A model generated the notes under the pieces. It searched no databases, was not told the DNA's origin, and saw only the letters and a program-made list of their open reading frames with translations. Both the position numbers and the translations under genes were made by a program. Shown here one piece after another: positions 22,036 through 53,705 of a DNA stretch of 64,000 nucleotides (position 1 is the first letter of the stretch; each line of letters opens with the position of its first letter). Location: the IMG/VR virus record IMGVR_UViG_3300034117_001582, positions 186,001 through 250,000 of that record; one strand, written 5' to 3'.

Positions 22036-22629
22036 ATGTTACTAAAAGAAGAAATATCACGAATAAAAAAAATAATGAATTTATCTGAAGGGTTATTTGA
22101 TAATTTTAATATTTCAGATTTTAAAAAAATGGATCCACCATCAAATGGTAGTAAAGAAACCAAAAAAGAAATAGACTATTTAGAAGATATTGACGTTGAC
22201 TCATTATTTGTTCAAGAAAAAGATGATATGTTGGGTAACTTTATAAAGTTTTTAGATGGTAAGAAATTAAAATACGATAAAAAACAACTTAAAAAGATAT
22301 ACGACGACTCATACCATATCGTTAAAGAACTAAAAAATCATTTTAAAAGACCAAGACCATTTGATTTAAAACCAAAATTAAAAGACGAAGTTACAGATTC
22401 AATGGAAGGGTTTGCATATCCATCAGGACACTCAACAACATCCTATCTTTTATGTTACGTTTTAAGTGAATTATACCCGAAATATAAAAAAGACTTTGAA
22501 AAAATTGCAGAAGATATTGTTTTTTCAAGACAAATGGCTAAAGCACATTACCCGTCAGACATTAAATTTGGTAAAAAGTTAGCGAAAAGTATGTTTAAAC
22601 ATTTAAAAGATGGTGATTTAATCCATTAA
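22036..22629 (+). CDS. PAP2-superfamily phosphatase with leader
   Basis: KNHFKRPRP, YPSGH and SRQMAKAHYPSD motifs; MLLKEEISRIKKIMNLSE leader; TATTTAT at 22023-22029. Confidence 0.88.
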   Translation: MLLKEEISRIKKIMNLSEGLFDNFNISDFKKMDPPSNGSKETKKEIDYLEDIDVDSLFVQEKDDMLGNFIKFLDGKKLKYDKKQLKKIYDDSYHIVKELKNHFKRPRPFDLKPKLKDEVTDSMEGFAYPSGHSTTSYLLCYVLSELYPKYKKDFEKIAEDIVFSRQMAKAHYPSDIKFGKKLAKSMFKHLKDGDLIH

Positions 22630-23178
22630 GTTGGTAATAACCTCTTCTTGGAAGAAGTATTTAACCTGATGTATATCCTCCCCTAACTCATTTTGTAGTC
22701 TAATCTCTTTTTTTTCATCGTATCCAGCAAACTCATCATCAGAATCGTATGTTTGGTACCCGTTTGACTCCAAAACAAAATCAATCTCTGTTAGGTTTTG
22801 ATTTTTATCGGTAACTATAACACCAACCCATTCCTCACCATGCCATTTTACCGACCCATAGTGTAGGATTTCGTCTGTTAATATGTCGGAATAGTCATAT
22901 TTGAATGAAAATTCACTACCATCACGTAAATAAGTGGTATATTCCTCACCTTCTTTATCCTCAAAATCAGGTGTTTTACCTTCAAAATCGGTGTTTTTAG
23001 GGTTAAAATCACCTTTTTTACCCCCATTTAACCACTCTGAATAGCGATTTAAGGTCATTTTTTCCTCATTTTCAAGGTTTTCATACCCAATTTTACCTAT
23101 TTTTTCTAATATTTGGTCTATTTCTTGGGTGTTTTCGACCAAAAAACGGTATTGAGACTCTGTAATTATGATTTTCAT
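22618..23178 (-). CDS. MKIIITE-leader protein with a DUF6576-like helical motif
   Basis: MKIIITESQYRFLVE then EIDQILEKIGKIGYENLENEEK. Confidence 0.65.
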   Translation of the reverse strand: MKIIITESQYRFLVENTQEIDQILEKIGKIGYENLENEEKMTLNRYSEWLNGGKKGDFNPKNTDFEGKTPDFEDKEGEEYTTYLRDGSEFSFKYDYSDILTDEILHYGSVKWHGEEWVGVIVTDKNQNLTEIDFVLESNGYQTYDSDDEFAGYDEKKEIRLQNELGEDIHQVKYFFQEEVITNLMD

Positions 23179-23235
23179 ACAAATAAATAGTCTTTTTTGT
23201 TGGTTTTTACTTAAAAAAGTAGTATTTTAGCGTAT

Positions 23236-24510
23236 ATGTTAGTAGAAAAACTTAAAAATATTCCAAAAAGTAGTGGTTGTTACCTTTTTAAAGACAAAAA
23301 AGGTCAAATTATCTATGTTGGTAAGGCAAAACACCTCCCAAATAGGGTAAAATCGTACTTTTCTAACAAAAATCACACAAGTAAAACCAAATTATTGGTA
23401 GAAAACGTGTCAGATGTGGATTTTTTGACCACTTTAGACGAAAATTCGGCACTTGTGCTTGAAAATGACCTAATTAAGACCCATAATCCCAAATTTAACA
23501 TTAAATTAAAGGACGACAGGTCAAAAAAATGGTATCTAACCCTTACAAATGGTGATTTTCCACGTTTAGAAGTTAAAAATGACACAAGTTTAGACTCAGA
23601 CCCCCTAATTGAAGTACCAAGTAGTAGTTTATGTCATGAAATGTATGATTTATTACATGATATCTTTAATTTACGTTCATGTTCTTATGAATTAACACCC
23701 GAAAACATTGAAAATAACAAGTTTAAAGTGTGTTTAGAGTCCCATATGGGTCGATGTGACGCCCCATGTGTATCAAACATCAATAAATTTATCTATCGTG
23801 AGGTAATAACTGAACTAAAACAGGTAGTTTCATTCAACTTTGACCAACTACGAAGTAAATTAATTCGTAAAATGAACGCTTTTAGTAAAAATATGGAGTT
23901 TGAGAAGGCAAATACCATCAAATTTCGACTAAATGCACTTGATAAGTATGAAAAATGTGTAGAATCCGCAAGAATTGGTGGTTATTTGGTGATTGCCGAC
24001 GAGTTCAAGACTACTTTTGGGTTACAAAACGCCCCAATTGACATAGAAATGTATGATAACTCCCATACTGCGGGTGATTGTCAGGTATCTGCCCTTGTTA
24101 GATATACAAATGGTAGGAAGAACACGTCAGAATACCGTAAGTTTAACATTAAAACGGTTGAGGGTCCTGATGATTACGCATCATTTGATGAGGTTTTACG
24201 TAGAAGGTTTACCAGATTACTTAAAGAACGTGGAAAACTACCTGACATGGTAGTAATCGATGGTGGTAAGGGTCAATTAGGGGTGGCAAAGAGGGTTTTT
24301 GAGGAACTTTCACTACTTGATAAGGTAGATTTACTATCTATTGGTAAAAACTCGTCTCACAAGTCAGATACTGTCCACTTTTGTGGCGGAAATAGTGTTA
24401 AATTTGAAAATTCTAAGTTTTTTAACCTACTTGGTACTATACAAGATGAGGTTCACAGGTTTGTTATTACTTTTCACCGTAAAAAACGAACAAAAACTAT
24501 GTTTAATTAA
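23236..24510 (+). CDS. uvrC: UvrC-like excinuclease (GIY-YIG + UVR + RNase H-like domains; no C-terminal HhH)
   Basis: GCYLF...IIYVGKAK.L.NRVKSYF; IEMYDNSH; YRKFNIK...DDYA...RRF; PDMVVIDGGKGQL; QDEVHRF, then ends. Confidence 0.93.
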   Translation: MLVEKLKNIPKSSGCYLFKDKKGQIIYVGKAKHLPNRVKSYFSNKNHTSKTKLLVENVSDVDFLTTLDENSALVLENDLIKTHNPKFNIKLKDDRSKKWYLTLTNGDFPRLEVKNDTSLDSDPLIEVPSSSLCHEMYDLLHDIFNLRSCSYELTPENIENNKFKVCLESHMGRCDAPCVSNINKFIYREVITELKQVVSFNFDQLRSKLIRKMNAFSKNMEFEKANTIKFRLNALDKYEKCVESARIGGYLVIADEFKTTFGLQNAPIDIEMYDNSHTAGDCQVSALVRYTNGRKNTSEYRKFNIKTVEGPDDYASFDEVLRRRFTRLLKERGKLPDMVVIDGGKGQLGVAKRVFEELSLLDKVDLLSIGKNSSHKSDTVHFCGGNSVKFENSKFFNLLGTIQDEVHRFVITFHRKKRTKTMFN

Positions 24511-24546
24511 AAAAACTCCATCTCTTAGTTTGAAATGGGGTTTAAA
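24509..24546. terminator. Bidirectional terminator-like hairpin
   Basis: AAACTCCAT...ATGGGGTTT between convergent genes. Confidence 0.5.
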
Positions 24547-24550
24547 TTGT

Positions 24551-24844
24551 TTAATCTCTTGGGAAAACAGTACTTTTTACTTTAACTCCCTTTGGTAATT
24601 CAAAAGTTTCGGGTCTTTGACTTTCAATACGTTTATATTTTTGAACAGGAAAATTATAATTTAGTTTATTTAACTCCATCATGTATTTAATACCGTGTTC
24701 TTTGATTCTATTGATAACATCATCAACCAATTCGGTTTGTTTGTTATATGAAACACCATGAACCATTTCAAGATCATAATTTGATTCATTAATAACAAGG
24801 TTTGTTATTCTTTTTATCTCCGATTCTGTAATTCTTCTACTCAT
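24551..24844 (-). CDS. ITESEI-leader hypothetical protein
   Basis: MSRRITESEIKRITNLVINES. Confidence 0.75.
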   Translation of the reverse strand: MSRRITESEIKRITNLVINESNYDLEMVHGVSYNKQTELVDDVINRIKEHGIKYMMELNKLNYNFPVQKYKRIESQRPETFELPKGVKVKSTVFPRD

Positions 24845-24853
24845 ATTTTAATA

Positions 24854-29152: not shown

Positions 29153-29617
29153 TTATAATTCAAGATATAACACATCTCTTTCTTCATTTGATTGGTGTTT
29201 TTTATACCCCAACTTATTCATTAATTTTTGAGACCCAACATTATCGTGTCTAACAATGTTAGTAGCATATTTATACCCAAGATTTTTAATTATGTCGTGA
29301 CACTCGTGTTTTAGTTTTTCACCCCAACCCTGTCTTTGGTACGGTTGGTCAATGTCTAAACTATATTGATACACACAATTATCTTGATTAAACATATCAT
29401 TATTGGTTTCCATAAACTTAGTCAAATTAGGACTTAAAGATAACCCATTTTCAAAATCTATAATATTTGTTTCACCGATATGTTTACCATCTGTAGTTAT
29501 GATACATACTATCATACCATTTGGAGATTTAATGTCCCCATAAGTTACTATTTCGTAATCTTTAACACTTTCGTACATTATTGATTTAATTCGGTTTATA
29601 CTCTCATATAGATTCAT
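29153..29617 (-). CDS. GNAT acetyltransferase with MNLYESINRIK leader
   Basis: LDIDQPYQRQGWG...N.GSQKLMNKLGY; start reset to MNLYES with TATTTAT just upstream. Confidence 0.85.
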   Translation of the reverse strand: MNLYESINRIKSIMYESVKDYEIVTYGDIKSPNGMIVCIITTDGKHIGETNIIDFENGLSLSPNLTKFMETNNDMFNQDNCVYQYSLDIDQPYQRQGWGEKLKHECHDIIKNLGYKYATNIVRHDNVGSQKLMNKLGYKKHQSNEERDVLYLEL

Positions 29618-42293: not shown

Positions 42294-42707
42294 TTATTTT
42301 TTTTGTTTGGGTACGCTAATACAGGATATCACTTTACCCTCACATTCCATATACTTCACAACCTCAACACCTGGAGGTATATTACCTGAAACGGTTGTTG
42401 TGGTTGTATTTCCTACCGTTACTGTAGATGAATTACCTTGTGCCATTAACCAGTTTCTTTCGGCATCATATTGGGCATACCTAAAAGCATCATACCCATA
42501 ACCTTCACCTTTTATGGTGTTTGGTGGACAAGTAAATGTTTTTTCAACTTCACAACCAAATTTAACTTGTTCAAATTCACCATCTTCCAAACGATTAAAT
42601 AACTTATCAAAAAATTTACGGACCTTTTTTTTAAATCCACGTTCATTTTGTTCATATAATCCCATTATATGTTTTTTCTCTTCTTCGCTGATAATAAACT
42701 TATTCAT
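42294..42707 (-). CDS. Leader cassette, Cys-containing hypothetical protein
   Basis: MNKFIISEEEKKHIMGLYEQ. Confidence 0.75.
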   Translation of the reverse strand: MNKFIISEEEKKHIMGLYEQNERGFKKKVRKFFDKLFNRLEDGEFEQVKFGCEVEKTFTCPPNTIKGEGYGYDAFRYAQYDAERNWLMAQGNSSTVTVGNTTTTTVSGNIPPGVEVVKYMECEGKVISCISVPKQKK

Positions 42708-42791
42708 ATTAATGATTTATAAATAAATACCATATAAAACAAAAAACCCCCTCCGTATAAGGAAAGGGTTCACATATTAATATAAAATTAT

Positions 42792-43022
42792 TTACATACC
42801 ATCTCTAAATCGAGATTCAGCGCCACGTCTTACTTTTCTAGACGATGTCATTTCATCAGCAATGTTTCTTAAAATACTAACGGTTTCTTCGTGACTAGAA
42901 TTTGAGTTTCTTATAACATCCATAATATCGGAGTATAAAGTATTTTTTTCCATGTCCTCACTAACTATACGTTTAACTAATCTTGTTAAATCTCTTTCTG
43001 TAAGTCTAATTATTTTTTTCAT
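42792..43022 (-). CDS. Leader cassette, small hypothetical protein
   Basis: Start reset to MKKIIRLTERDLTRLVKRIVSE. Confidence 0.8.
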   Translation of the reverse strand: MKKIIRLTERDLTRLVKRIVSEDMEKNTLYSDIMDVIRNSNSSHEETVSILRNIADEMTSSRKVRRGAESRFRDGM

Positions 43023-43079
43023 ATTAATAAATATCACATAAAACAAAAAACCCCACCTTAATTAGAGAATGGGGGGTGA

Positions 43080-43172
43080 TTAACTTTTTCCGTGATAATC
43101 AAAATAATCTTTTCTGTCCTTAAGTACCGTTGCAATCACGAACGAAATACTTAATATACTAAATATTGCCAT
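43080..43172 (-). CDS. 30-aa hydrophobic peptide
   Basis: My translation: MAIFSILSISFVIATVLKDRKDYFDYHGKS*; ends at a boundary terminator. Confidence 0.35.
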   Translation of the reverse strand: MAIFSILSISFVIATVLKDRKDYFDYHGKS

Positions 43173-43249
43173 ATACAATATATACTAAAAATTCATTCAA
43201 TAGTCAATTATCGTAGGTTATGAAATAGTTAAGTTTAAACACCTAAAAC

Positions 43250-43687
43250 TTAATGAGTCGTTCTCTTTATCTTTTTATTCTTTTTCACATTAAAGTTATA
43301 TCTTTTATCGTGAGAAGGACCCTTTTCATACCAAAACTCAATACAGTCAATATCAAGACCAGTTTTTTCATTAACATAAGAAAGAACGGTTTTAGAAAAT
43401 AGTTTTTTTCTTGTTGCAACTTTTGGTATAAAATTATCTATTTCTTCTCCGGTCTCAGAATTAACATACATATCTTGTTTACACCCCTCACCTTTACCAC
43501 CAACAGTATAAACTGTAAATATCGCATCACCGTATCCAATCGACTCATTTTCAAACGGATTACTATCATTTGGATATATTCTTATCCTATCGGATTCTCT
43601 TTCATATGAAAGTTTTGGCCCATACAATACGTCCAACAAATTAAATACAATTTTCTGATACTGTGATTTTGTTATGATTACGTCCAT
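43250..43687 (-). CDS. Cassette protein, tandem paralog of 43736
   Basis: IITKSQYQKIVFNLLD...KGEGCK.DM...RKKLFS.T.LSYVNEKT.LDIDCI. Confidence 0.8.
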   Translation of the reverse strand: MDVIITKSQYQKIVFNLLDVLYGPKLSYERESDRIRIYPNDSNPFENESIGYGDAIFTVYTVGGKGEGCKQDMYVNSETGEEIDNFIPKVATRKKLFSKTVLSYVNEKTGLDIDCIEFWYEKGPSHDKRYNFNVKKNKKIKRTTH

Positions 43688-43735
43688 ATAAGATAAATAT
43701 ACAAGAAATAAAAACCACTACGAATATAGGGGGAC

Positions 43736-44146
43736 TTACTTAGTTGTTGTCTTTTTATTTTTTTTAACGTTAAACCTATATCTATTTTCGAAATAAGTTT
43801 CATCATTATTATATATTTCATAAGGAAAATCAATACAGTCAATATCAAGATTTGTTTTTTCATTAACATAAGAAAGAATGGTTCTAGAAAATAGTTTTTT
43901 TCTTAATACCGCTGGTGGTAAATACCTTTCAATTTCCTCAATTGTTTGAGAAAGAACTAACATATCTCTTTTACATCCTTTAGATTTTCCCTGTTTTGTA
44001 TAAACTCTAAAAATTTCTTCACCATGATCTGATAAAATCTCAAATATCTCCTCATCTTTTTTAACTGAAATATTTGGGCCATATAATGTGTCCAACAAAT
44101 TAAAAACAATTTTCTGATATTGTGATACTGTTATAACAATTTTCAT
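43736..44146 (-). CDS. Cassette protein, tandem paralog of 43250
   Basis: MKIVITVSQYQKIVFNLLD; same core motifs. Confidence 0.8.
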   Translation of the reverse strand: MKIVITVSQYQKIVFNLLDTLYGPNISVKKDEEIFEILSDHGEEIFRVYTKQGKSKGCKRDMLVLSQTIEEIERYLPPAVLRKKLFSRTILSYVNEKTNLDIDCIDFPYEIYNNDETYFENRYRFNVKKNKKTTTK

Positions 44147-44225
44147 ATAAGATAAATATAATGGAAAACAAAAAACCCCACCTTAATTAAAAGATGGGGG
44201 TTTCTAAATTTATTATTTATATTTT

Positions 44226-44660
44226 TTAATGACCAGATTGTGAACCTCCATGGTCGTAACGTTCACGTGGGTCCTGTGAATATTGTGGGTCATACTTACT
44301 TGGTTTGCCGTAACTTGTATATTTTGATGTTTGATTGTCATCAACCATTTTCATTGCATCATTAGGATTCATACCGTAATCGGCATAAATTAATCCTTTA
44401 CCTTTTCTTTTTAAATCTCTCAATGATTCTTCATCACCTCTACAATATCTAATGATGATAACCTTGTTTCCGTCTTCATCTTCTTCAATATCAACATGAC
44501 CTTTATTATCTTCTTCATCCATATATTCTTCTGATGAGTCACAATCAACGGCTTTTATATCAAATGTAAAATCCTCATTTGAATTTTCTTCCATTTCCAT
44601 AATAGTTCTTTTAACAATTCTTGTTAAATCTCTTTCAGTTAATCTTATAATTCTTGCCAT
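44226..44660 (-). CDS. LTERDL-leader acidic hypothetical protein
   Basis: MARIIRLTERDLTRIVKRTIME. Confidence 0.8.
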   Translation of the reverse strand: MARIIRLTERDLTRIVKRTIMEMEENSNEDFTFDIKAVDCDSSEEYMDEEDNKGHVDIEEDEDGNKVIIIRYCRGDEESLRDLKRKGKGLIYADYGMNPNDAMKMVDDNQTSKYTSYGKPSKYDPQYSQDPRERYDHGGSQSGH

Positions 44661-44731
44661 AATATTTTAATTTATTAATAAATACTTTGATATTCAAAAA
44701 ACCCCACCTTAATTAAAAGATAGGGATTTTT

Positions 44732-45031
44732 TTAGGATTTTAATTTATCCAAAACTTGAATAAGTTGGTCAGCTCGTTTGTCAGTGTGACTTCTAGAATC
44801 TTGGTGGACTTCCTCAATACGTCTATGGATATGTTCCAAAGTGATATCCAATTCACGTCTTTGGTCATCCAATCTTCTTTGGGAGTATTCCATTTCCCGC
44901 AAATAAGACAATTCCAATTCTTTTAAATCTTTTTTTGTTCTAACAACCATAACTAACCCCCAAACAAGAGCAACAATAAAAATTATTGCAATAATCGAAA
45001 GGATACCTAAAGTAAAATAAAATGTTTCCAT
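44732..45031 (-). CDS. Single-TM coiled-coil protein without leader
   Basis: METFYFTLGILSIIAIIFIVALVWGLVMVV then a heptad pattern; alternative start 45061. Confidence 0.7.
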   Translation of the reverse strand: METFYFTLGILSIIAIIFIVALVWGLVMVVRTKKDLKELELSYLREMEYSQRRLDDQRRELDITLEHIHRRIEEVHQDSRSHTDKRADQLIQVLDKLKS

Positions 45032-45156
45032 TAATTTAAGATTTTGTTGTTTATACCTCAAGGGTATATAAAGTATAATGAAAACATATTAAAAATAAAT
45101 AAAAAACCCCTCTTTGTTGGGAGGGGAATCATTTTAAATTTATCAAAATAATTGTT

Positions 45157-45594
45157 TTAGTGATTTTCTCCTGATAAGTACTTAGGATTTGGATATACTA
45201 TCTTCTTATTATATAATTTATTCTTATCTTCATCGGATAACTTTGGGGTCTTGTCTTTGGATTTGGATGCAAGTAGTGAAACAAGTGGTTCTAATGGTGT
45301 TAAAGGCACAGGAGATTTAATGAGCAAACAATTTAATACTTTTGTTACTTCTTTTAGATTATTGTAGGTCAACATATTTCCAATAGCATTTAGACATTCT
45401 TTACTTATTAAATCTCCAGTACCCATAGTACCAGACAAAGTCTTTTTAGGTTTTGTGTCACAAGATTTTGGTATACTTAGAGTTGTTTTACTAAAACAGC
45501 CACCGACCATTGATGTGGTGTCTTCCTCTTCTTTAAGAACTCTTCTTACAATACGTGATAAATCTCTTTCTGTTAATCTAACTATTCTTGCCAT
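45157..45594 (-). CDS. LTERDL-leader Cys-containing hypothetical protein
   Basis: MARIVRLTERDLSRIVRRVLKEE. Confidence 0.8.
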   Translation of the reverse strand: MARIVRLTERDLSRIVRRVLKEEEDTTSMVGGCFSKTTLSIPKSCDTKPKKTLSGTMGTGDLISKECLNAIGNMLTYNNLKEVTKVLNCLLIKSPVPLTPLEPLVSLLASKSKDKTPKLSDEDKNKLYNKKIVYPNPKYLSGENH

Positions 45595-45674
45595 AATATT
45601 TTAATTTATTATAAATACTTCGTAAAACAAAAAACCCCTCTGTTGGGAGGGGGAGTATTTTAATTTTTTTAAAA

Positions 45675-46121
45675 TTATAGATATGCTTTTATATGATTTC
45701 TTTTTAACCAACTTCTAACTTGTTCCTCTGTTTGACCTTTTTGTATTTTTGATAATACATGTTTACGGTCACCATTACCTAGTATTTCACCGGTTTTTGG
45801 AACATATTTTATCATGAGATACCCGTCCATTGGTTTTTTTAATTGAATCTCTATGCCGGTTTTAGCAGTTACGGTAACCTCTTGATATGTTTGTAACTTT
45901 GCATACCTATCGGTACCATCGTCTTTACAAGGAATTTCTTTATAATTATTATCAATACAACTGTCAGGATCTCCATACCTATCGGTATCATTGCCCTTAC
46001 AAGCTATTCTATTACCTTTAAAATCAATACAGAATCCTTCTTCATCCGCAGTATTTTCATTAATTATTCGTTTAACAATTCTTGCTAAATCAGATTCAGT
46101 TAATCTTATAATTCTTGCCAT
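45675..46121 (-). CDS. LTESDL-leader hypothetical protein with short Cys repeats
   Basis: MARIIRLTESDLARIVKRIINE; CID...I.CK..GTDRY repeated twice. Confidence 0.8.
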   Translation of the reverse strand: MARIIRLTESDLARIVKRIINENTADEEGFCIDFKGNRIACKGNDTDRYGDPDSCIDNNYKEIPCKDDGTDRYAKLQTYQEVTVTAKTGIEIQLKKPMDGYLMIKYVPKTGEILGNGDRKHVLSKIQKGQTEEQVRSWLKRNHIKAYL

Positions 46122-46216
46122 AATTTATATTTTATTATAAATACATCATAAAACAAAAAAGGAAGGGGGCGGGGGGATGGTTCAATGTAAAAAATTTTTC
46201 CAGAAAATTAGCCGTG

Positions 46217-46621
46217 TTATAAATACAATTTTATTATATCAATAGGGTCCAACCCTATTTCACTAATATTAAATAGTTTGTTTAAACGGTCTCCCGTTAA
46301 TGAGGAAGTTGCTCCAAGTTCATTATCTATTTCTATATCATAAAATATTTCCAAAGCAAATCCACCATTGCGTTCGCTATCCACAAATAAAAAAGTTCTA
46401 TCCTTAAATTTAATAAGATACAAAGGACCAAATGGTTTTACCTGAGACCTAAACCACCAACGGGTTACCAAATCACGAACATTAGTTGGCATATCATCAT
46501 ACGTCTCAATAAGTTTAACTTCCAATTCAAAATCAAACTCATATTTCAAAAACTTTTTAAACTTATCGGTTTTTGATTCAAACAATAAGTTATACTGGTC
46601 TTCAGTTATAATGATTTTCAT
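46217..46621 (-). CDS. MKIIITE-leader single-module protein (module shared with 37752 and 38444)
   Basis: LFES...KFKKFL...FGPLYLI...IGLDPIDIIKLY; start reset to 46621. Confidence 0.75.
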   Translation of the reverse strand: MKIIITEDQYNLLFESKTDKFKKFLKYEFDFELEVKLIETYDDMPTNVRDLVTRWWFRSQVKPFGPLYLIKFKDRTFLFVDSERNGGFALEIFYDIEIDNELGATSSLTGDRLNKLFNISEIGLDPIDIIKLYL

Positions 46622-46693
46622 ATAAGATAAATATAAGGAAACAAAAAACCCCACTGATGAGGTGGGGAATTATTTTACATATTATAAGGATTA

Positions 46694-47299
46694 CTAATCA
46701 AGTTCTGAACCCCATGATTTAATTATATTATTAATTGGTTTTTTGTGCCATTTTCTATAAATGTCAATACTATCTTTAACATCTTCCATCATATCACCAT
46801 TAAATCTTTGTTTATATAGGGTTACAACTTCATTATATTTTTTCCAACATTCAGGACAGTTTCCTTCTTTTTTTAAAGGTTTTGACATATTTAAAAATGC
46901 TGCTTCAATAGGGGCTTCCGCATTCCCATCAGTTATAAACTCAGGAGCGGAGTAATCTTTAGGTACCATCTTTTTTCCAAATTCTTGTTGAATCAAGACC
47001 GCTAATGAGTGACTTTTCTGTAATGATGCGTAAATTAAATCGGCAAGTTCTTTTGTTGTCATTGAATTTTCAATATAGTTATAATCAAGTTCTCCACCTT
47101 CAATAACGTCCCTATACAAATTTTTAATTTTTTGAATAAAGGATGGTTCATTTTGTTCAGAAATTAAAGGTTTAACATCTCCCAATGTTGATTCCATTAA
47201 TTGTTTAAACCTTGAAGTATCAACCGACATACCCCCATTATGTTGTTCACGAATACTATTCTTTTCTTCGTCTGATAAATTATTTAATAAATGTTTCAT
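46694..47299 (-). CDS. Double-leader hypothetical protein
   Basis: LSDEEKNSIREQH...RFKQLMESTLGDVKPLISEQ (compare 39895). Confidence 0.8.
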   Translation of the reverse strand: MKHLLNNLSDEEKNSIREQHNGGMSVDTSRFKQLMESTLGDVKPLISEQNEPSFIQKIKNLYRDVIEGGELDYNYIENSMTTKELADLIYASLQKSHSLAVLIQQEFGKKMVPKDYSAPEFITDGNAEAPIEAAFLNMSKPLKKEGNCPECWKKYNEVVTLYKQRFNGDMMEDVKDSIDIYRKWHKKPINNIIKSWGSELD

Positions 47300-47385
47300 A
47301 ATATATTTGTTTTATTTATAAATACCACATAAAACAAAAACCCCCACTCGTTGGAATAGGGGTTTAATAATTTGACCGATATGAA

Positions 47386-47745
47386 TTAATATTTAGGTTC
47401 TCTACCACACGTTAGTTTATAGTAGTAAATTATAAAATCAAGTTTCTCATTAATTAGATATTCCCTTATTGATAAATCCAATGAATTACCATCAGATTCA
47501 AATTCAGATTTAATCTGTTCATTATGTAAATATAACCTTAAAAACAATCTTTCCATTACATGATTAAAGTATGTTTTTAGTTTTAAATATTTACAAATTT
47601 TCATATCAGACAATATCCCTATTAACAATTCAGTTATATCAATCCCCCTTCTTCTGAAATATGTGTCACTTATTGTTGATTCAGATATTACCTGTTTAAC
47701 GATTCTTGTAATATCTGATTCCGTAAGTCTTATAGTTTTTTTCAT
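47386..47745 (-). CDS. LTESDI-leader hypothetical protein
   Basis: Start reset to MKKTIRLTESDITRIVKQVISES. Confidence 0.8.
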   Translation of the reverse strand: MKKTIRLTESDITRIVKQVISESTISDTYFRRRGIDITELLIGILSDMKICKYLKLKTYFNHVMERLFLRLYLHNEQIKSEFESDGNSLDLSIREYLINEKLDFIIYYYKLTCGREPKY

Positions 47746-47801
47746 ATAATGATAAATATATGGGGAAATAAAAAACCCCACTAGTTGGAATGGGGGGTAT
47801 C

Positions 47802-48176
47802 TTATCTTTTATTCCATTTGGATTTTAATTTGGACTTGTATTTTTTTGGGATGTACTCAAATAAAAACTCTTTCACCCTCTTTCTATATTTTTCATCTAC
47901 CTGTTTAAAATAAAACCCCGAACCTCTAAGTAACTTAAATGTGATTAATCCCCCCATTTGTTCTAAAAAATGGTCTTCATTTTTAAAACCATTAGTATCT
48001 ATGTCATCAATAGTTTTATTAACAACATTTAATATGTGGTCATTTAATGAAGTATCTTTTTTATTATAGAATCTTTCTAAATCCGATATCTTTTTTATTT
48101 CATCACTTTCTTCAGTTATAACTCGTCTAACCATTTCTATAAGTTCTGATTCTGTAAGTCTAATTACTTTTTTCAT
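47802..48176 (-). CDS. LTESEL-leader hypothetical protein
   Basis: MKKVIRLTESELIEMVRRVITEE. Confidence 0.8.
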   Translation of the reverse strand: MKKVIRLTESELIEMVRRVITEESDEIKKISDLERFYNKKDTSLNDHILNVVNKTIDDIDTNGFKNEDHFLEQMGGLITFKLLRGSGFYFKQVDEKYRKRVKEFLFEYIPKKYKSKLKSKWNKR

Positions 48177-48653
48177 AGTATTATTGTTTAAATATAAATA
48201 CCCCTATTTTCCTAAAATTTTTCTGGAATTTTTTTTTAACATATAGGGGGTATTCCGACTTTTAAAGAATTTTTACCAAAATATTTTTTAAGACCATATA
48301 CCCTTTTTTATAACCCATACTCTGCAAGAGGGATTGACCCCCCTTTTGACCCCTGACATTGTGTCAGAAAGAGGGAGGATACGGGGGAGGGGGCCCCCAT
48401 TAAATGAGGGGAGGGGGGTATGCCAAAGATATGAGGGGGGTAGACATAGGGGATGTTAGTTATCAACATAATGTTCATAAAGATATATGAAATAAATGTG
48501 GGGGATTGTTTGGCAGTATCAATAACATTCACTATCTTTGTATAGACAATGTGAGAGAGATGTCGGGCTGAGGGAACAACACCCTTTGGAGTGTAGACTC
48601 CAACCTGCCTTTATAATATATAATGGGACTTATAAATAATTATGTTAGACCCC

Positions 48654-50103: not shown

Positions 50104-51225
50104 TTATGCGTAGTTAACGTCTCTTGTTGTATCTATTTTTGCAAACTCCTGAGAGTAATCGTATATCTTATTTAAATCCACCTCTATATATGAATCATAC
50201 TCATCTTTTACTGTTTTTGTTGCGGTATTAAAAAGTGTTTTAACGTCATGTGCGTCAGTATCATTAATAAACAATTTAAAATTTAATAACGTAATATCTT
50301 CTGTACTTTTGAATGGTATCTTCATTAAATTATTCTCGTAAACCACATTAAAAACATTATCACCACTTTTAATCTTAACATTATCTTTTATTAATTTAAT
50401 AAAATTATCTAATGTTCCAAAATCATCTACCCCTAAAAGTCTTTTTAAATTTTGAACTCTTGATGAATTTTCAGTAGCAGAGTTACCGTAATCGGTATTA
50501 GTATTAACGGAAATTTGGGGGCCTTTAGCGTCTTCTGGTAAATAATCCACACCCTTACTGATAAAATACCCGCTAAGGCAGTGATTAAACTCGTGTACTA
50601 AAATTAACATAATAGAGTTTTTATTAACGTCACTTGGAAATACATTTTTAACACAAAAATTCAACTTAGAATATTCACCTTTAATAACAAACCCACCTGT
50701 AGAATCGTCACATGTCAAACTAAAAACTAAATTTACACTATTTAAAAAGTTTTTTAATTCATTTTTTTGTTTGTTATCCCATGCCGTTATCACGCCTTTT
50801 AATTTTACCTCCTCTTCTTTTACCATATCATTAAAAAACTCAAGGGTTTCTTTTGCTCTTTGTAATTCAGAAATATTGGCATTTTTTAACCCATTAACTT
50901 TGTTTTGCCAATTAATTACTTGTTTTTTATATTTTTCTAAATCTTCTGTATTGTATTTAGAACCTTTTCCTATTTTTTCTTGAACTTTTTTATTGAACCA
51001 CTCGCTATCTATGTATTTTAACATGTAAGTTTTTGCTTCTGTAAAAAATGGTTTAACAAAATTTTCAACCTCTGTTATTTTTTCTTGTTCGGTTTTGGCT
51101 TTGTCTTCCCAATAGGCTCGAAGGGTATTTAAATTAATGTTTTTTAATTTACAAGCATCATCCACTTCCTCTTTAATTACACCCATTATTGATTGTATTC
51201 TTCTTATGTTTTCGTGTAAATTCAT
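50104..51225 (-). CDS. MNLHENIRRIQ-leader HExxH metallopeptidase-like protein
   Basis: ILVHEFNHC...ENSSRV..LKRLL; paralog of 53720. Confidence 0.7.
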   Translation of the reverse strand: MNLHENIRRIQSIMGVIKEEVDDACKLKNINLNTLRAYWEDKAKTEQEKITEVENFVKPFFTEAKTYMLKYIDSEWFNKKVQEKIGKGSKYNTEDLEKYKKQVINWQNKVNGLKNANISELQRAKETLEFFNDMVKEEEVKLKGVITAWDNKQKNELKNFLNSVNLVFSLTCDDSTGGFVIKGEYSKLNFCVKNVFPSDVNKNSIMLILVHEFNHCLSGYFISKGVDYLPEDAKGPQISVNTNTDYGNSATENSSRVQNLKRLLGVDDFGTLDNFIKLIKDNVKIKSGDNVFNVVYENNLMKIPFKSTEDITLLNFKLFINDTDAHDVKTLFNTATKTVKDEYDSYIEVDLNKIYDYSQEFAKIDTTRDVNYA

Positions 51226-51285: not shown

Positions 51286-51987
51286 TTATGGTACTTGTTG
51301 TAACCCTAACTCAAAGTAGTCATACTCGTTGTTGTAAAATCTTGGATTGTTTACAAATATATTATACATTGGAAGTAAAATGTTATGTAACTCTTCTTTC
51401 CATTCGTCGTAGTCAGTTTCTGTCATATCACTTATAAAATATTTAGGTTTTACTTTTTCTAATGTTCGTTCTAAATTGTCTTGAAGATTAGTTTTTCTTA
51501 GGTTTGTTATATTTCCATAAACATATACTTCTACTTCAGGGTCATTTGTTGTGACATGCGTGGTTTCATAATCAAAGTCAAACTCATAACGATAAAACAC
51601 CCCCGAAAAATCAATATGTTTAATTTGTTTTCCACTAACATTAAGATGTGTTCTATCTTCTTTTGATACATAACAATTGTTTCTGATATTTTTCATCCAT
51701 GAAGCAAAATGCTTATATTTGTTAAAATCAGTGTTTGTCATATCACAAAATGATTTAAACTCATCATGTAAAACTTGAGTTAGTATTGTTTTTGAATATG
51801 AATAATCATTTGGGTTTTTAACTTTCCATTTTATTTGTAACCCTGTCCATTTTGGAACTAAAAAAAGTCCTTCGAATTCTATTGGGTTTTCATTTAAATA
51901 ATTATAATAGTAATACTTTACAGGATTTTCTTTAGGGTTGGTTCTTTCTTCCCTTAATACTCTTCTTATGTTCTCTTGTAGGTTCAT
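51286..51987 (-). CDS. MNLQENI-leader hypothetical protein
   Basis: MNLQENIRRVLREE; ATGA overlap with the upstream gene. Confidence 0.8.
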   Translation of the reverse strand: MNLQENIRRVLREERTNPKENPVKYYYYNYLNENPIEFEGLFLVPKWTGLQIKWKVKNPNDYSYSKTILTQVLHDEFKSFCDMTNTDFNKYKHFASWMKNIRNNCYVSKEDRTHLNVSGKQIKHIDFSGVFYRYEFDFDYETTHVTTNDPEVEVYVYGNITNLRKTNLQDNLERTLEKVKPKYFISDMTETDYDEWKEELHNILLPMYNIFVNNPRFYNNEYDYFELGLQQVP

Positions 51988-52715
51988 TCTGATAAATCTA
52001 TAAACCAAGCAGATATTGGCACGTTTAGTTGGTTGGCGATGGTTGATCGTTTGTGTCCACCAATTAATGTATATTCATTTCCTTCTCTTCCGCCTGTTGG
52101 TAATTTCATTACAAATGGTGCTGGAAGTTCTCTATGTTTTTCATTTCTTATTTTTTCTATATTATCAACATAACCTTTGTGACGTTGTTTAACTTCTCCA
52201 TCATCGCCTGTCATTTGTTTAATTAAACCTGATGATGTGGTATCTTTAAACATTCCTGGAAACTCTTTTGAGAATCTACCCATATAAAATGTGTTATTTA
52301 TCATATCATTATCCCATTCTTCCATTCTTCCTTTATTAAACAAATTAAACCCTTCCATTTGTGATTGTCCATCTTTTAATAAAACTTGTCTAAAATCCTC
52401 CCAATCATCCATTAAATCAGATATTTCTTTATCTAATAGAATGTCTTTAATTTCTTGTTCATCATCCACTTCACTTCCTTTTGAATGTTCGGCAATCATT
52501 TTGAATGTATGAGGAAATATGGAATACATTAAATCATAATTTTGTGGGTGAAAGAATTCATCTTTACTGAACCTCATATTATTTCCCAATAGTTCATCTA
52601 ACTCTTGGTTAAAGTATTCTACTGTTGGTTCTAACCAAGTGATAGAATATGGATTTGATATCTCATTTAACCCCATCATTGATTTAATTCTTTGTATGTT
52701 TTCTTGTAGGTTCAT
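51984..52715 (-). CDS. MNLQENI-leader protein with a C-terminal ParB/Srx-like motif
   Basis: LPAPFVMK...YTLIGGHKRSTIA. Confidence 0.55.
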   Translation of the reverse strand: MNLQENIQRIKSMMGLNEISNPYSITWLEPTVEYFNQELDELLGNNMRFSKDEFFHPQNYDLMYSIFPHTFKMIAEHSKGSEVDDEQEIKDILLDKEISDLMDDWEDFRQVLLKDGQSQMEGFNLFNKGRMEEWDNDMINNTFYMGRFSKEFPGMFKDTTSSGLIKQMTGDDGEVKQRHKGYVDNIEKIRNEKHRELPAPFVMKLPTGGREGNEYTLIGGHKRSTIANQLNVPISAWFIDLSE

Positions 52716-52728
52716 ATTAATGAATATA

Positions 52729-52938
52729 TTATTTTTTGATAATTCTTATTCTTTTTTTTTCAATCCAATTTTTTAATTCTTGAGTTTCTGGTACTTCAGT
52801 TAAAACAAACTCCCTAATATAATCATCGGCTAAAAAATTTGGTAAATTAACGGGTTGAAATCCCATTTCGTTTTTTGTGATTAAGACCAAATGATTTTTT
52901 TTTCTTTTGTGTCTTTTGGTGGGTATTAGTTTTTTCAT
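52729..52938 (-). CDS. Small basic hypothetical protein
   Basis: 69-aa ORF filling the gap between cassettes. Confidence 0.55.
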   Translation of the reverse strand: MKKLIPTKRHKRKKNHLVLITKNEMGFQPVNLPNFLADDYIREFVLTEVPETQELKNWIEKKRIRIIKK

Positions 52939-52978
52939 TTATGTTTTATTATTCTTTTTATATAACCTTGTAGGTTCA

Positions 52979-53296
52979 TTACTTTGTCTTCTTAACACAA
53001 TTAGGATATCGTTTACCAAACATTGTCTTCATACCTTTTTGAGTATATCCTGCCCAACATCTCTCTGTAAGTTCACCTTCTTTCATCTCACTTTGTTTAC
53101 GTTTACCTTGACAGTGAGCTCTTTGACTAAATCCTTTTGGGTTATTGCAGTCGATTGATTTTTTATACTTTTCTGACCACTTTTCTGTAACATCCCCTTC
53201 TCCCATCTCTTCGTCATTTTTTATTGTATTTTCATTGATTACTCTTTTAACTAACAAAATAAGGTCTGATTCCGTTAACCGTATTACTTTTTTCAT
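52979..53296 (-). CDS. LTESDL-leader protein carrying two Cys-paired mini-modules
   Basis: VTE-KWSEKYKKSIDCNNPKGFSQRAHCQG; LTE-RCWAGYTQKGMKTMFGKRYPNCVKK. Confidence 0.8.
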   Translation of the reverse strand: MKKVIRLTESDLILLVKRVINENTIKNDEEMGEGDVTEKWSEKYKKSIDCNNPKGFSQRAHCQGKRKQSEMKEGELTERCWAGYTQKGMKTMFGKRYPNCVKKTK

Positions 53297-53297
53297 A

Positions 53298-53705
53298 TTA
53301 TCTATTGTATGGCCTAAACCTTGATGGGTTTGATTTTATTGCTGACTTTGGGAATTTTAATCCAACACCCTGTTGTCTTGCGTTCTTTAATGTTCTTGCG
53401 TATTCGGTTAGTTCTTCATTTCCCATATCATCAATAGCCTTTACTAATTTATGGCATTTCTCTGATACCTCACCCTTTTCGTGATCAGTTATTGATAATT
53501 TTACTTTGTTGTAATTTATTTTAATATCAGGATGATGATTTTGTGATTCGGCAATCTTCGCAACTTTATTAACAAATTCCATTGATTCATTAAAATCTTT
53601 GAATTTAAAAGTTCTTTCTAATTTTTGCTCTGAATCACTCCAACCTTTGGATTCATTCATATTTATCATTTCCTGTATTCTTCTTATGTTCTCTTGTAGG
53701 TTCAT
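53298..53705 (-). CDS. phhB: Pterin-4a-carbinolamine dehydratase (PCD/PhhB) fused to the MNLQENI leader
   Basis: GW...KLERTFKFKDFNESMEFVNKVAKIAESQNHHPDIKINYNKV. Confidence 0.85.
   Translation of the reverse strand: MNLQENIRRIQEMINMNESKGWSDSEQKLERTFKFKDFNESMEFVNKVAKIAESQNHHPDIKINYNKVKLSITDHEKGEVSEKCHKLVKAIDDMGNEELTEYARTLKNARQQGVGLKFPKSAIKSNPSRFRPYNR

What the first reader, a model, noticed from the sequence alone, without database searches (positions are those of the whole stretch)
22036..53705. Ordinary host-type enzymes carry the leader, suggesting cargo capture
Seen: a near-complete pterin-4a-carbinolamine dehydratase (53298), a PAP2 phosphatase (22036), GNATs (29153, 41321, 39895), an alpha/beta-hydrolase-like protein (39393) and a ParB/Srx-like protein (51984) each begin right after a leader ending in E. 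The first 41 nt of phhB are identical to those of 53720, and 51984 and 56631 differ at 1 of 42 nt. Identity at synonymous sites points to recent DNA-level grafting. Inference: genes can be recruited into the virion payload by acquiring a leader. PCD or PAP2 delivered by a phage particle is not something I know to be described.
Basis: partly seen in the sequence, partly recalled or inferred. Interest (0 to 1): 0.72.

Follow-up and report, generated by a model that had tools for sequence, protein, structure and literature searches.

The report
Shared leader tags on phage enzymes
A 292-kb T4-like lake phage of Bacteroidota puts short interchangeable N-terminal tags, each ending in the cutting motif of its own head protease, on about 56 unrelated proteins including ordinary enzymes. 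This most likely marks them for packing into the capsid and delivery into the host, as T4 does for a handful of proteins.

Summary
The core observation is real. All seven named genes start with a shared leader that ends in hydrophobic-x-Glu, and both nucleotide identities hold (41/41 and 41/42 nt). PCD, PAP2 and one GNAT are confirmed. A second GNAT, the ParB/Srx-like and the alpha/beta-hydrolase-like proteins are only leads, and 39895 is unverified.

The window lies in a 291,867-bp T4-like jumbo phage of the freshwater Bacteroidota "bS21 phage" clade. Genome-wide, 56 genes carry one of five leader families on 51 unrelated bodies. Conservation stops at [L/I/V]-x-E, the T4 gp21 protease motif. 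The phage encodes a gp21-family protease, and its capsid protein has I-N-E|A where T4 gp23 is cleaved. Leader genes share a TATTTAT box with head and tail genes.

Best reading (about 0.57): the leaders are T4-type capsid-targeting propeptides. The "recent capture" idea is not supported. PCD, PAP2 and ParB-like orthologs in over 100 listed metagenomic relatives each all carry leaders. What is recent is leader swapping or gene conversion between genes. Virion association is untested. This is a new variant of a known kind.

The parts
53298..53705 (-). Pterin-4a-carbinolamine dehydratase (135 aa): 18-aa NLQE-type leader, PCD core (about aa 19-93), basic C-terminal tail
   Evidence: Pfam PF01329 at 5.5e-24. 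NCBIfam NF002017 at 84.5 bits against cut-off 80, matching aa 16-94 to model positions 14-92 of 94. AF2 core pLDDT 83-94; leader and tail about 50.
53652..53705 (-). PCD leader MNLQENIRRIQEMINMNE. Its first 41 nt are identical to the start of the next gene upstream.
   Evidence: In 99 orthologs E5, E13 and E17 are 97-100% conserved, each with L/L/V at P3. The junction is hydrophobic-x-E|SKGW in 116 of 118.
53301..53426 (-). C-terminal 42-aa basic module of PCD (MGNEELTEYARTLKNARQQGVGLKFPKSAIKSNPSRFRPYNR). It is preceded by another L-T-E site.
   Evidence: The same module ends unrelated leader-bearing proteins in relatives (P0267, P0268, P0311, P0326, P0372). It occurs only once in this genome.
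53720..54787 (-). 355-aa leader protein of unknown function, with the same 41-nt leader start as PCD
   Evidence: It is a paralog of 50104-51225. No Pfam hit.
50104..51225 (-). 373-aa NLQE-leader protein, paralog of 53720-54787
51984..52715 (-). 243-aa NLQE-leader protein with a ParB/Srx-like body (GGHKRS motif)
   Evidence: AF2 pLDDT 89.8, with leader helix aa 3-13 and junction aa 15-19 below 50. Top fold hits are sulfiredoxin and ParB but weak, E 0.14. Orthologs carry several different leader types, all ending L/I-x-E|(V/I)(S/T)NPY.
56631..57140 (-). 169-aa NLQE-leader protein; its leader DNA matches that of 51984-52715 at 41 of 42 nt
22036..22629 (+). PAP2 / class-A acid-phosphatase-like enzyme (197 aa) with leader MLLKEEISRIKKIMNLSE
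   Evidence: PF01569 at 41.2 bits against 27.2. Weak PhoC match. The orthologs read that are called from their true start all carry the leader. TATTTAT at -13.
29153..29617 (-). GNAT acetyltransferase (154 aa from the ATG at 29617) with leader MNLYESINRIKSIMYE
   Evidence: PF00583 at 28.1 bits against 20.7. PHROG acetyltransferase. TATTTAT at -11.
41321..41947 (-). 208-aa RLTE-leader protein (GTG start), possibly a GNAT
   Evidence: Leader seen. No Pfam, NCBIfam or PDB match. Atlas look-alikes include GNAT clusters at 0.93.
39895..41235 (-). 446-aa protein with a sixth leader type (...LGNVKPLICE), shared with 46694-47299; function unverified
   Evidence: No family match.
39393..39893 (-). 166-aa leader protein (MILKENIRKILKE), with a weak alpha/beta-hydrolase lead
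58713..60308 (-). 531-aa two-body protein with an N-terminal leader and a second, internal leader copy at about aa 336-349 (window 59262-59303)
42000..48200 (-). Run of small RLTE, IIITE and ISEEEK leader genes. Each is an autonomous cassette: terminator-like hairpin, TATTTAT box, leader, body.
60310..63855 (-). Six consecutive genes with the LIRHILKE-type leader on unrelated bodies
13624..15228 (-). 534-aa PG_binding_1 plus GH19-type lysozyme-like protein with a leader-like N-terminus (MKTILHEIKNFKRLSNLKE). The same N-terminal type occurs on some ParB-like orthologs.

Best explanation
The leaders are T4-type capsid-targeting propeptides, expanded to proteome scale.

Proposed mechanism. Late in infection, about 56 accessory proteins are made with a 12-22-residue amphipathic N-terminal helix. 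These include PCD, a PAP2 phosphatase, GNATs, a lysozyme-like protein and, in relatives, an ADP-ribosyltransferase. The helix docks them onto the scaffolding core while the prohead assembles. The phage's gp21-family prohead protease then cuts after Glu in one to three [L/I/V]-x-E sites inside and at the end of the leader. This frees the mature enzyme inside the capsid, and it leaves with the DNA at the next infection.

Leaders behave as interchangeable address tags. They move between genes by recombination or gene conversion between leader DNA copies, helped by the repeated terminator-promoter-leader cassette structure. That is why neighbouring genes can have identical leader DNA.

Shown: the modular anatomy, the motif at the boundary, the protease gene, the homologous capsid-protein cleavage motif, the shared promoter-like box, and old but swap-prone leader-body fusions.
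Inferred: docking, cleavage, packaging and ejection.
For: 1. The genome is T4-like. It has a Peptidase_S77 (gp21) protease at genome 154799-155509 (88.5 bits) and a Gp23 capsid protein (213 bits), in a portal / protease / scaffold / MCP module.
2. Five leader families sit on 56 genes with 51 unrelated bodies. In every family, conservation stops exactly at [L/I/V]-x-E. 54 of 56 leader genes have [LI]xE in the first 26 aa, against 59 of 225 other genes.
3. T4 gp23 ...FLTE|AEIGG aligns with ...LINE|AAST in this phage and ...IVSE|ANVTG in Flavobacterium phage immuto, so the protease specificity is probably conserved. T4 head proteins start in the same style: Alt MELITE, gp24 MAKINELLRE, gp67 MEGLIE, gp21 ...LLIE.
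4. T4 capsid-targeting sequences (CTS) are 10-19-aa propeptides shared by unrelated internal proteins, are sufficient to package foreign proteins, and have been proposed as an evolutionary mechanism for incorporating various proteins (PMC9026906; PMC3012670).
5. A TATTTAT box precedes 29 of 32 leader genes that have an upstream gap of at least 25 nt, against 50 of 133 other genes (p=3e-8). It also precedes the protease, scaffold, baseplate, sheath and fibre genes.
6. In 99 PCD orthologs the leader is 75% identical against 90% for the body, yet E5, E13 and E17 with L/L/V at P3 are 97-100% conserved. Orthologous bodies carry different leader types, always keeping the hydrophobic-x-E junction.
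7. Synonymous sites in leaders are close to random (same codon 0.57-0.72 against 0.49-0.53 expected), so selection acts on the peptide.
8. Internal leader copies persist in fused proteins, as expected for a cleavable linker.
9. AF2 models of two leader proteins give the same anatomy: helix aa 3-13/15, junction aa 15-19 with pLDDT below 50, then a confident body.
10. One relative's NLQE-leader protein carries ART-PolyVal, a domain of proteins that phages inject, like T4 Alt (PMC7824862).
11. Tail and baseplate genes with the same TATTTAT box lack leaders, so the leader is not a general feature of late genes.
Against: - There is no proteomic or experimental datum for this phage or any relative. 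Cleavage, packaging and ejection are all inferred.
- 56 tagged genes (about 17% of ORFs of at least 60 aa) is far more than T4's handful.
- Some tagged proteins are large (641 aa, and 1031 aa with a leader-like end).
- [LI]xE is a common tripeptide in this AT-rich proteome: 26% of ordinary N-termini have one.
- The leaders have no sequence homology to the T4 CTS MKTYQEFIAE.
- The TATTTAT box is assigned to late genes only by association with structural genes, not by timing data.
- NLQE leaders over-use rare codons (AAC, CTA, ATA), which leaves room for a DNA- or RNA-level role.
- Why a phage would inject PCD is unexplained.
- The co-fold of protease with leader gave no verdict.
Confidence: 0.57

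Rival explanations
1. The leader is mainly a nucleic-acid-level module. It would be a conserved translation-initiation region (for example one favoured by ribosomes carrying the phage's own bS21 protein in a host without Shine-Dalgarno use) or a recombination anchor of mobile promoter-terminator cassettes, like the PeSL cassettes of T4-type phages. The encoded peptide would be incidental.
For: The phage encodes bS21 inside the head module, and that clade's authors propose selective translation of late phage mRNAs (PMC9723584). NLQE leaders over-use rare codons: AAC 74% against 31%, CTA 54% against 8%, ATA 89% against 34%, in 186 starts. Some leader pairs are identical at DNA level. Leader genes sit in repeated hairpin-TATTTAT cassettes. 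In a lake DNA run, contigs join and break at leader positions.
Against: In the two largest families codon identity at conserved residues is near the codon-usage expectation (0.57 against 0.53; 0.60 against 0.49), while the residues themselves are conserved. Five families with unrelated DNA share only the peptide feature hydrophobic-x-E at the boundary. Structural late genes with the same TATTTAT box have no leader. Internal leader copies far from any start codon stay conserved. A recombination role is compatible with the best explanation rather than opposed to it.
Confidence: 0.13
2. The leader is a protein-level tag for something other than the capsid. Candidates are a docking helix for a phage chaperone or unfoldase (a ClpA/B-like ATPase lies next to the head module), a degradation or timing tag, or a shared oligomerisation or localisation helix for proteins that act inside the infected cell.
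For: The tagged bodies include ordinary cytoplasm-type enzymes (PCD, GNAT, P-loop kinases), for which a role during infection is easier to imagine than injection. A ClpA/B-like gene is at genome 165090-167135. The clade is reported to carry Clp protease and chaperones. About 17% of ORFs being tagged is a large share for capsid cargo.
Against: This does not explain why every family ends in the gp21-type cleavage motif, with several such sites in a row. It does not explain why the junction is the most conserved part or why the style matches N-termini of T4 head proteins. PAP2/acid phosphatase, PG_binding plus lysozyme, and LysM bodies are envelope-acting types, which fits ejection through the envelope better.
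Confidence: 0.17
3. The leader proteins are cut by the prohead protease but are transient core or scaffold components, or decoys. They would be degraded and expelled at maturation rather than delivered to the next host.
For: In T4, gp22, gp67 and gp68 are cut into fragments that mostly leave the head. Several leader proteins here are small, acidic and rich in [LI]xE.
Against: Folded enzyme bodies with intact catalytic motifs (PCD His triad, PAP2 motifs) are conserved at 80-90% identity across relatives. That argues for a function of the mature protein. Cleavage motifs are concentrated in the leader, not spread through the bodies.
Confidence: 0.08
4. The shared N-termini reflect ordinary paralogy or chance in an AT-rich genome.
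For: A few leader genes are true paralogs (4 small groups). K/I/E/N-rich N-termini are common.
Against: Only 5 of 319 within-family pairs share any similarity beyond residue 25. HMM hits are essentially confined to N-termini. The same leaders head 58 body clusters in other viral contigs.
Confidence: 0.02

Closest known systems
T4 capsid-targeting sequences (CTS) of internal proteins IPI/IPII/IPIII and Alt, removed by prohead protease gp21
   Same: A short N-terminal propeptide is shared by otherwise unrelated proteins of one genome. It ends in hydrophobic-x-Glu. The genome encodes a gp21-family protease and a gp23-family capsid protein. Cargo genes lie in plastic regions. One cargo in T4 (Alt) is an enzyme, and an ART domain is among the leader proteins of relatives.
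   Different: There is no sequence homology to MKTYQEFIAE. This phage has five or six leader families instead of essentially one, and about 56 tagged genes instead of about five. Leaders are often longer (up to about 22 aa) with two or three tandem cleavage motifs. Bodies include host-type metabolic or envelope enzymes (PCD, PAP2, GNAT). Some also carry portable C-terminal modules. Nothing has been shown experimentally.
Propeptide-bearing head and ejection proteins of giant phages phiKZ, 201phi2-1 and SPN3US
   Same: These are jumbo phages with a gp21-related protease that cuts after Glu. They have dozens of head proteins, multiple cleavage sites per propeptide, and identical N-termini on diverged paralogs (gp53/gp54) that are likened to T4 CTS (PMC5694885).
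   Different: Their propeptides are mostly over 100 aa and their motif is S/A/G-x-E. The shared N-termini belong to paralogs, not to unrelated bodies. This phage is a T4-like lineage of Bacteroidota, not a phiKZ-like one.
Polyvalent proteins injected by phages (Iyer et al. 2017, PMC5512222)
   Same: The theme is a set of enzymatic effectors (ART, GNAT and others) carried in the virion and delivered with the DNA. ART-PolyVal occurs on one NLQE-leader protein.
   Different: Polyvalent proteins string 2-15 domains in one giant polypeptide. Here each effector is a separate small gene with its own tag, and only occasional two-body fusions keep an internal leader.
PeSL mobile regulatory cassettes of T4-type phages (Arbiol et al. 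2010; cited from my own knowledge, not read here)
   Same: Small accessory ORFs are flanked by repeated promoter and stem-loop sequences that can mediate modular shuffling. Here there are repeated hairpin-TATTTAT-leader units.
   Different: PeSLs carry early promoters and do not extend into a shared coding leader. Here the repeat continues into the first 12-22 codons, and the box is shared with structural genes.
bS21-encoding jumbo phages of freshwater Bacteroidetes (Chen et al. 2022, PMC9723584)
   Same: This is the same phage clade: 293-331 kb, 31-34% GC, and bS21 on the opposite strand between the portal, protease and MCP genes.
   Different: In the sections read, that paper does not mention the N-terminal leaders or any capsid cargo.

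Membership tests
T4-type capsid-targeting propeptide (CTS) system | A short N-terminal peptide shared by otherwise unrelated proteins of the same phage | tested here: met
   56 genes, 5 families, 51 unrelated bodies
T4-type capsid-targeting propeptide (CTS) system | The propeptide ends in the prohead-protease motif (L/I-x-E in T4) | tested here: met
   Conservation stops at [L/I/V]-x-E in all five families. The junction is conserved in 116 of 118 PCD orthologs.
T4-type capsid-targeting propeptide (CTS) system | The genome encodes a gp21-family protease whose specificity matches | tested here: inconclusive
   The protease gene is present (PF03420, 88.5 bits). The capsid protein has I-N-E|A at the position of the T4 gp23 cleavage site. 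Specificity itself was not measured, and the co-fold gave no verdict.
T4-type capsid-targeting propeptide (CTS) system | Sequence homology to the T4 CTS (MKTYQEFIAE) | tested here: not met
   No similarity beyond the general style. The closest in style are T4 Alt MELITE and gp24 MAKINELLRE.
T4-type capsid-targeting propeptide (CTS) system | The leader is removed in vivo, and the mature protein is present in DNA-filled heads and ejected | not testable with these tools
   Needs virion proteomics or infection experiments
Pterin-4a-carbinolamine dehydratase (PF01329 / NF002017) | Profile match above the curated cut-offs, and the His-His-Pro ... His catalytic residues | tested here: met
   84.6 bits against 26 and 84.5 against 80. 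H57 and P59 are invariant; H58 and H75 are nearly invariant. The body belongs to a phage-type subgroup (ITDHEKGGVS.KCHK) distinct from the cellular LTTH..GGLT.KD.
Pterin-4a-carbinolamine dehydratase (PF01329 / NF002017) | Dehydratase activity | not testable with these tools
   Needs an enzyme assay
PAP2 / class A acid phosphatase | PF01569 above cut-off, and the motifs KX6RP, PSGH and SRX5HX3D | tested here: met
   41.2 bits against 27.2. FKRPRPF, YPSGHS and SRQMAKAHYPSD are visible in the orthologs. The nearest named model, PhoC, matches only weakly.
GNAT acetyltransferase | Acetyltransf_1 profile above cut-off | tested here: met
   Applies to 29153-29617 only: 28.1 bits against 20.7. 41321 is a look-alike lead only. 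39895 has no match.
ParB/Srx fold | Profile or fold match, and the GxxR-type nucleotide-binding motif | tested here: inconclusive
   No Pfam match. Sulfiredoxin or ParB take the first 17 Foldseek places, and ParB/KorB recur lower, all weak: E 0.14-0.7 (up to 2.7 for the lower ones), TM 0.35-0.55 on the target. A GGHKRS motif is invariant.
Polyvalent proteins | One polypeptide with 2-15 effector domains | tested here: not met
   The bodies are single small proteins, and only rare two-body fusions occur.

The most novel reading that the evidence does not exclude
The phage clade uses a multi-family peptide address code. Five or six N-terminal leader families, plus portable C-terminal modules, would load some fifty separately encoded effectors into the virion. 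These include metabolic and envelope enzymes such as PCD, a soluble PAP2 phosphatase, GNATs, kinases and an ART. Different leader families would specify different copy numbers, positions or release order. Leader DNA would double as the recombination handle by which new cargo is captured and exchanged between co-infecting phages. This would be the largest natural protein-delivery repertoire known for a tailed phage.
Probability: 0.3. Interest if true: 0.82.

Novelty: new variant of a known kind. Interest (0 to 1): 0.62.

Why it matters
If the leaders are capsid-targeting propeptides, about one in six genes of a cosmopolitan lake phage clade would encode virion cargo. That would change how its many "hypothetical" accessory genes are read, from functions during replication to pre-made effectors that act in the first seconds of infection. 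It would show that the T4 CTS principle, so far documented for a handful of proteins, can scale to a modular, swappable tagging system that recruits host-type enzymes.

It also gives a sequence rule for predicting packaged proteins directly from metagenomes: an N-terminal helix ending in hydrophobic-x-E, in a genome with a gp21-family protease. The rule comes with a ready set of natural tags for protein packaging in Bacteroidota phages.

The hypothesis can be tested directly by virion proteomics on lake viromes where the phage is abundant.

Tried and rejected
- Co-folding the gp21-family protease with PCD residues 1-45: no verdict (score 0.00). This counts neither for nor against.
- tblastn of a 24-aa RLTE leader against 50,697 GenBank phage records: no match.
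- DNA pattern for the IIITESQ leader in the nearest cultured relative, Flavobacterium phage immuto: one match, not at an N-terminus. That phage appears to lack this leader family and so is not a ready test system.
- The DNA hits to T4-like cyanophages fall on the C-terminal CWxGY...PNCV module of 52979-53296, not on a leader.
- Pfam (also at E up to 5), NCBIfam and PDB sequence searches gave nothing for 41321, 39895 and 51984. For 39393, which was not searched against PDB, they gave only a weak, unrelated NCBIfam match.
- Reads and contigs laid on 50001-56000: the one RNA run holds only short contigs at 90-95% identity, so they come from a related strain. They show neither timing nor processing. 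The DNA-run joints at leader positions are what repeated leaders produce in assembly graphs, so I do not count them as evidence of rearranged variants.
- No tRNA or Rfam family anywhere in the window.
- A secretion-signal reading was considered and rejected. The leaders are charged amphipathic helices, and the phage uses an ordinary signal peptide plus a T9SS CHU_C domain where it needs export.
- T4's TATAAATA late promoter is not the enriched box here: 15 of 357 genes. TATTTAT is.

Full report
WHAT THE WINDOW IS

The window is bases 186,001-250,000 of a single 291,867-bp virus record (31.8% GC, estimated 99% complete). The genome encodes a T4 gp21-family prohead protease (Peptidase_S77, 88.5 bits) and a gp23-family major capsid protein (213 bits). 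These sit in a module of terminase, portal, protease, scaffold and capsid genes.

A ribosomal protein bS21 gene sits on the opposite strand inside that module. Size, GC content and this gene context match the "bS21 phages" of freshwater Bacteroidetes described by Chen et al. 2022 (PMC9723584). The sections of that paper that I read do not mention N-terminal leaders. A T9SS CHU_C protein in the window agrees with a Bacteroidota host. The stretch is held by many lake-water metagenomes from 2020-2025. The nearest deposited capsid proteins belong to uncultured huge phages, Microcystis phage Mel-JY01, Flavobacterium phage immuto and Rhodothermus phage RM378, at 34-44% identity.

CHECKING THE OBSERVATION

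All seven named genes start with a leader that ends in hydrophobic-x-Glu. The two nucleotide claims are exact: 41/41 nt between PCD and 53720-54787, and 41/42 nt between 51984 and 56631. Given the shared residues, identical codons have a probability of about 1-2e-3 from this genome's codon usage, and the shared codons include rare ones.

- Solid: PCD (Pfam 5.5e-24; NCBIfam equivalog 84.5 bits against cut-off 80), PAP2 (41.2 against 27.2, all three catalytic motifs visible) and the GNAT at 29153 (28.1 against 20.7).
- Leads only: the GNAT at 41321, the alpha/beta-hydrolase-like 39393 and the ParB/Srx-like 51984. For 51984, a confident AF2 model (pLDDT 89.8) has sulfiredoxin and ParB as all its top fold matches, but weakly (E 0.14), and it has an invariant GGHKRS motif.
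- Unsupported: 39895 as a GNAT.

HOW BIG THE PHENOMENON IS

Profile models of five leader families were run against the first 40 residues of 357 called ORFs. They find 56 genes at E<1e-3, and 36 of these are in the window:
- RLTE: M..IRLTESDL.RIVKRVI.E
- IIITE: MKIIITE.QY..L.E
- NLQE: MNLQENI.RI..MM.L.E, or MNLQE.I.K.LKE
- LIRHILKE
- ISEEEK: ..FIISEEEK..I..LH....LNE

A sixth type (...LG.VKPLI.E) is shared by 39895 and 46694. Beyond residue 25 the 56 proteins fall into 51 unrelated groups. Only 5 of 319 within-family pairs share any similarity. The same models hit only two non-N-terminal positions in the whole proteome. One lies just upstream of a likely true start. The other is a second leader copy inside the 531-aa protein 58713-60308.

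Many are on 200-335-kb contigs, with up to seven leader starts per locus. The 114 ORFs of at least 60 aa that begin there form 58 body clusters. Their few Pfam matches include P-loop kinase-type domains and ART-PolyVal.

WHERE CONSERVATION STOPS

In all five families conservation stops exactly at [L/I/V]-x-E. 54 of 56 leader genes have an [LI]xE within 26 residues, against 59 of 225 other genes. This count is partly circular. What is not circular is that five unrelated leader sequences share this one feature at their boundary.

In 99 PCD orthologs with leaders of equal length, the leader is 75% identical and the body 90%. Yet E5, E13 and E17, with L3, L11 and V/I15 at P3, are 97-100% conserved, and the junction hydrophobic-x-E|SKGW holds in 116 of 118. 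That is three tandem sites of the gp21 type.

T4 gp23 is cut after ...FLTE. That site aligns with ...LINE|AAST in this phage's capsid protein and ...IVSE|ANVTG in phage immuto (the 65-residue T4 propeptide is stated in PMC5694885). T4 head proteins read from the T4 record start the same way: Alt MELITE, gp24 MAKINELLRE, gp67 MEGLIE, gp22 MLKEQLIAE, gp21 ...LLIE.

AF2 models of two leader proteins show the same anatomy: a helix at residues 3-13/15, a junction at 15-19 with pLDDT below 50, then a confident body. For PCD there is also a floppy C-terminal tail.

EXPRESSION CONTEXT

A TATTTAT box lies 11-25 nt before the start codon of 29 of 32 leader genes that have an upstream gap of at least 25 nt, against 50 of 133 other genes (p=3e-8). 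The same box precedes the protease, scaffold, baseplate, sheath and giant-fibre genes. Those structural genes have no leader, so the leader is not a general property of genes with this box.

Between 42 and 48 kb, each small leader gene is a self-contained cassette: hairpin plus T-run, AAAACAAAAAA, TATTTAT, leader, body.

PEPTIDE OR NUCLEIC ACID?

At residues conserved within a family, codon identity is 0.57 (IIITE), 0.60 (RLTE) and 0.72 (NLQE). Codon usage alone predicts 0.53, 0.49 and 0.53. Selection therefore acts mainly on the peptide.

NLQE leaders do over-use rare codons across 186 independent starts: AAC 74% against 31%, CTA 54% against 8%, ATA 89% against 34%. That fits spread by copying of DNA, and perhaps some constraint at the start codon. 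I keep this as the main support for a nucleic-acid-level rival.

IS THE CARGO RECENTLY CAPTURED?

No.
- The PCD search returned 643 matches. The 120 listed are 78-92% identical, most over the full length, on contigs up to 305 kb, and all carry a leader.
- The PAP2 orthologs read that are called from their true start carry the leader. Five of the 12 read lack a called leader, through an internal start call, truncation or fusion. The ParB-like orthologs carry leaders too.
- More distant phage PCDs carry other leaders, including the IIITE type (P0254, P0307).
- Orthologs of the ParB-like body carry at least four leader types and hybrids.
- In each of three genomes the PCD leader resembles a neighbouring gene's leader more than it resembles the PCD leader of the other genomes.

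The fusions are old and the leaders are swapped.

Cellular PCDs of 89-100 aa align from query residue 15-20 onward, and the 94-position NCBIfam model matches from position 14. The leader therefore replaces the native N-terminal helix rather than extending the protein. The phage PCD body is a distinct subgroup (ITDHEKGGVS.KCHK against the cellular LTTH..GGLT.KD) that keeps the catalytic histidines.

C-TERMINAL MODULES

The last 42 residues of PCD are a separate basic module preceded by an L-T-E site. In relatives it ends several unrelated leader proteins. Other phage PCDs end instead in a CWxGYTQxGMKTMFGKxYPNCV module or a zinc-ribbon-like tail. In T4, Alt is processed at both ends by gp21 (PMC9026906). 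Whether these tails are cut off here is open.

INTERPRETATION

The anatomy matches the T4 capsid-targeting sequence (CTS) system point for point, except for sequence homology and scale. T4 CTSs are 10-19-residue propeptides shared by unrelated internal proteins. They are sufficient to package foreign proteins, and have been called a possible evolutionary mechanism for incorporating various proteins into capsids.

I therefore rate [quoted passage not shown] as the best explanation, at about 0.57. The rivals are:
- a nucleic-acid-level initiation or recombination module (0.13);
- a peptide tag for a non-capsid partner (0.17);
- transient core components that are degraded (0.08);
- chance or paralogy (0.02).

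No experiment or proteome bears on any of this. The one co-fold I ran gave no verdict.

NOVELTY

The principle is known from T4, and giant phages with many processed head proteins are known. I found no description of the following:
- several interchangeable leader families on about 17% of a phage's ORFs;
- their presence throughout a cosmopolitan lake phage clade;
- host-type enzymes such as PCD and a soluble PAP2 among the tagged proteins. A full-text search for PCD together with virion and bacteriophage found nothing relevant.

This is a new variant of a known kind. It is interesting mainly because it yields a testable sequence rule for predicting virion cargo from metagenomes.

Noticed in passing
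window 42000-48200: Each small leader gene is an autonomous cassette: GC-rich hairpin plus T-run, AAAACAAAAAA, a TATTTAT box 11-25 nt before the ATG, then leader and body. The unit is repeated at least six times at spacings of about 430-530 or 1100-1640 nt. It is reminiscent of the PeSL shuffling cassettes of T4-type phages.
   Followed up: partly
window 59262-59303, inside 58713-60308(-): A second, internal leader copy (LKESIRKVLKEETDG) lies at about aa 336-349 of a 531-aa protein. Relatives hold in-frame fusions that also keep internal leaders (P0311, P0372, P0241, P0171). These may be small polyproteins cut by the head protease.
   Followed up: partly
window 53301-53426 (PCD C-terminus) and 52979-53296(-): There are portable C-terminal modules. 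The basic 42-aa PCD tail ends unrelated leader proteins in relatives. The CWxGYTQxGMKTMFGKxYPNCV module at the end of 52979-53296 ends PCDs of other phages, and it is the part that matches T4-like cyanophages at DNA level.
   Followed up: partly
genome 156088-156282(+), outside the window (about 30 kb upstream of window base 1): A ribosomal protein bS21 gene lies on the opposite strand between the portal and prohead-protease genes. This places the phage in the published bS21 phage clade of freshwater Bacteroidetes.
   Followed up: yes
186 NLQE-leader starts in loci L011-L128: Leader codons 2, 3 and 7 strongly prefer codons that are rare genome-wide: AAC 74% against 31%, CTA 54% against 8%, ATA 89% against 34%. 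The cause could be copying of DNA or a constraint near the start codon; this is unresolved.
   Followed up: partly
window 1-4067: This is the 3' part of a 2919-aa ORF (genome 181308-190067) with 43-45% GC against about 30% elsewhere, and with long overlapping ORFs on both strands. It is probably a repetitive giant fibre-like protein. It is followed by three paralogous 168-172-aa genes outside the window.
   Followed up: no
window 16755-19214(-) and 23236-24510(+): Two host-like genes without leaders: an 819-aa protein with a signal peptide, SprB and PKD repeats and a T9SS CHU_C sorting domain; and a full-length UvrC (GIY-YIG, UVR and RNase H-like endonuclease domains).
   Followed up: no
window 4592-15228(-): A block of large proteins (641, 1031, 871, 341, 111 and 534 aa). 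The first has an ISEEEK leader and most of the rest have leader-like N-termini (E..I..F/I.R/K.L/M...E). It includes a CarboxypepD_reg/Ig-like protein and a PG_binding_1 plus GH19 lysozyme-like protein. These are candidates for large ejection proteins.
   Followed up: partly
window 49150-50100: About 950 bp without a convincing ORF, tRNA or Rfam match, with slightly higher GC than the flanks.
   Followed up: partly
window 50001-56000, in lake DNA run X1: Contig depth spikes at 52601-52800 and 53001-53200, and many contig joints start or end at leader positions (for example 53709 to 54767, which would drop the gene between two identical leaders). This is expected from repeated leaders in assembly graphs. 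It might also include real deletion variants.
   Followed up: no
genome 156575-157303(-), outside the window: The 242-aa ORF next to the portal has 10 [LI]xE sites (4.1 per 100 aa, against a genome mean of 1.5). That is the pattern of T4 core proteins gp67/gp68, which the protease shreds.
   Followed up: no
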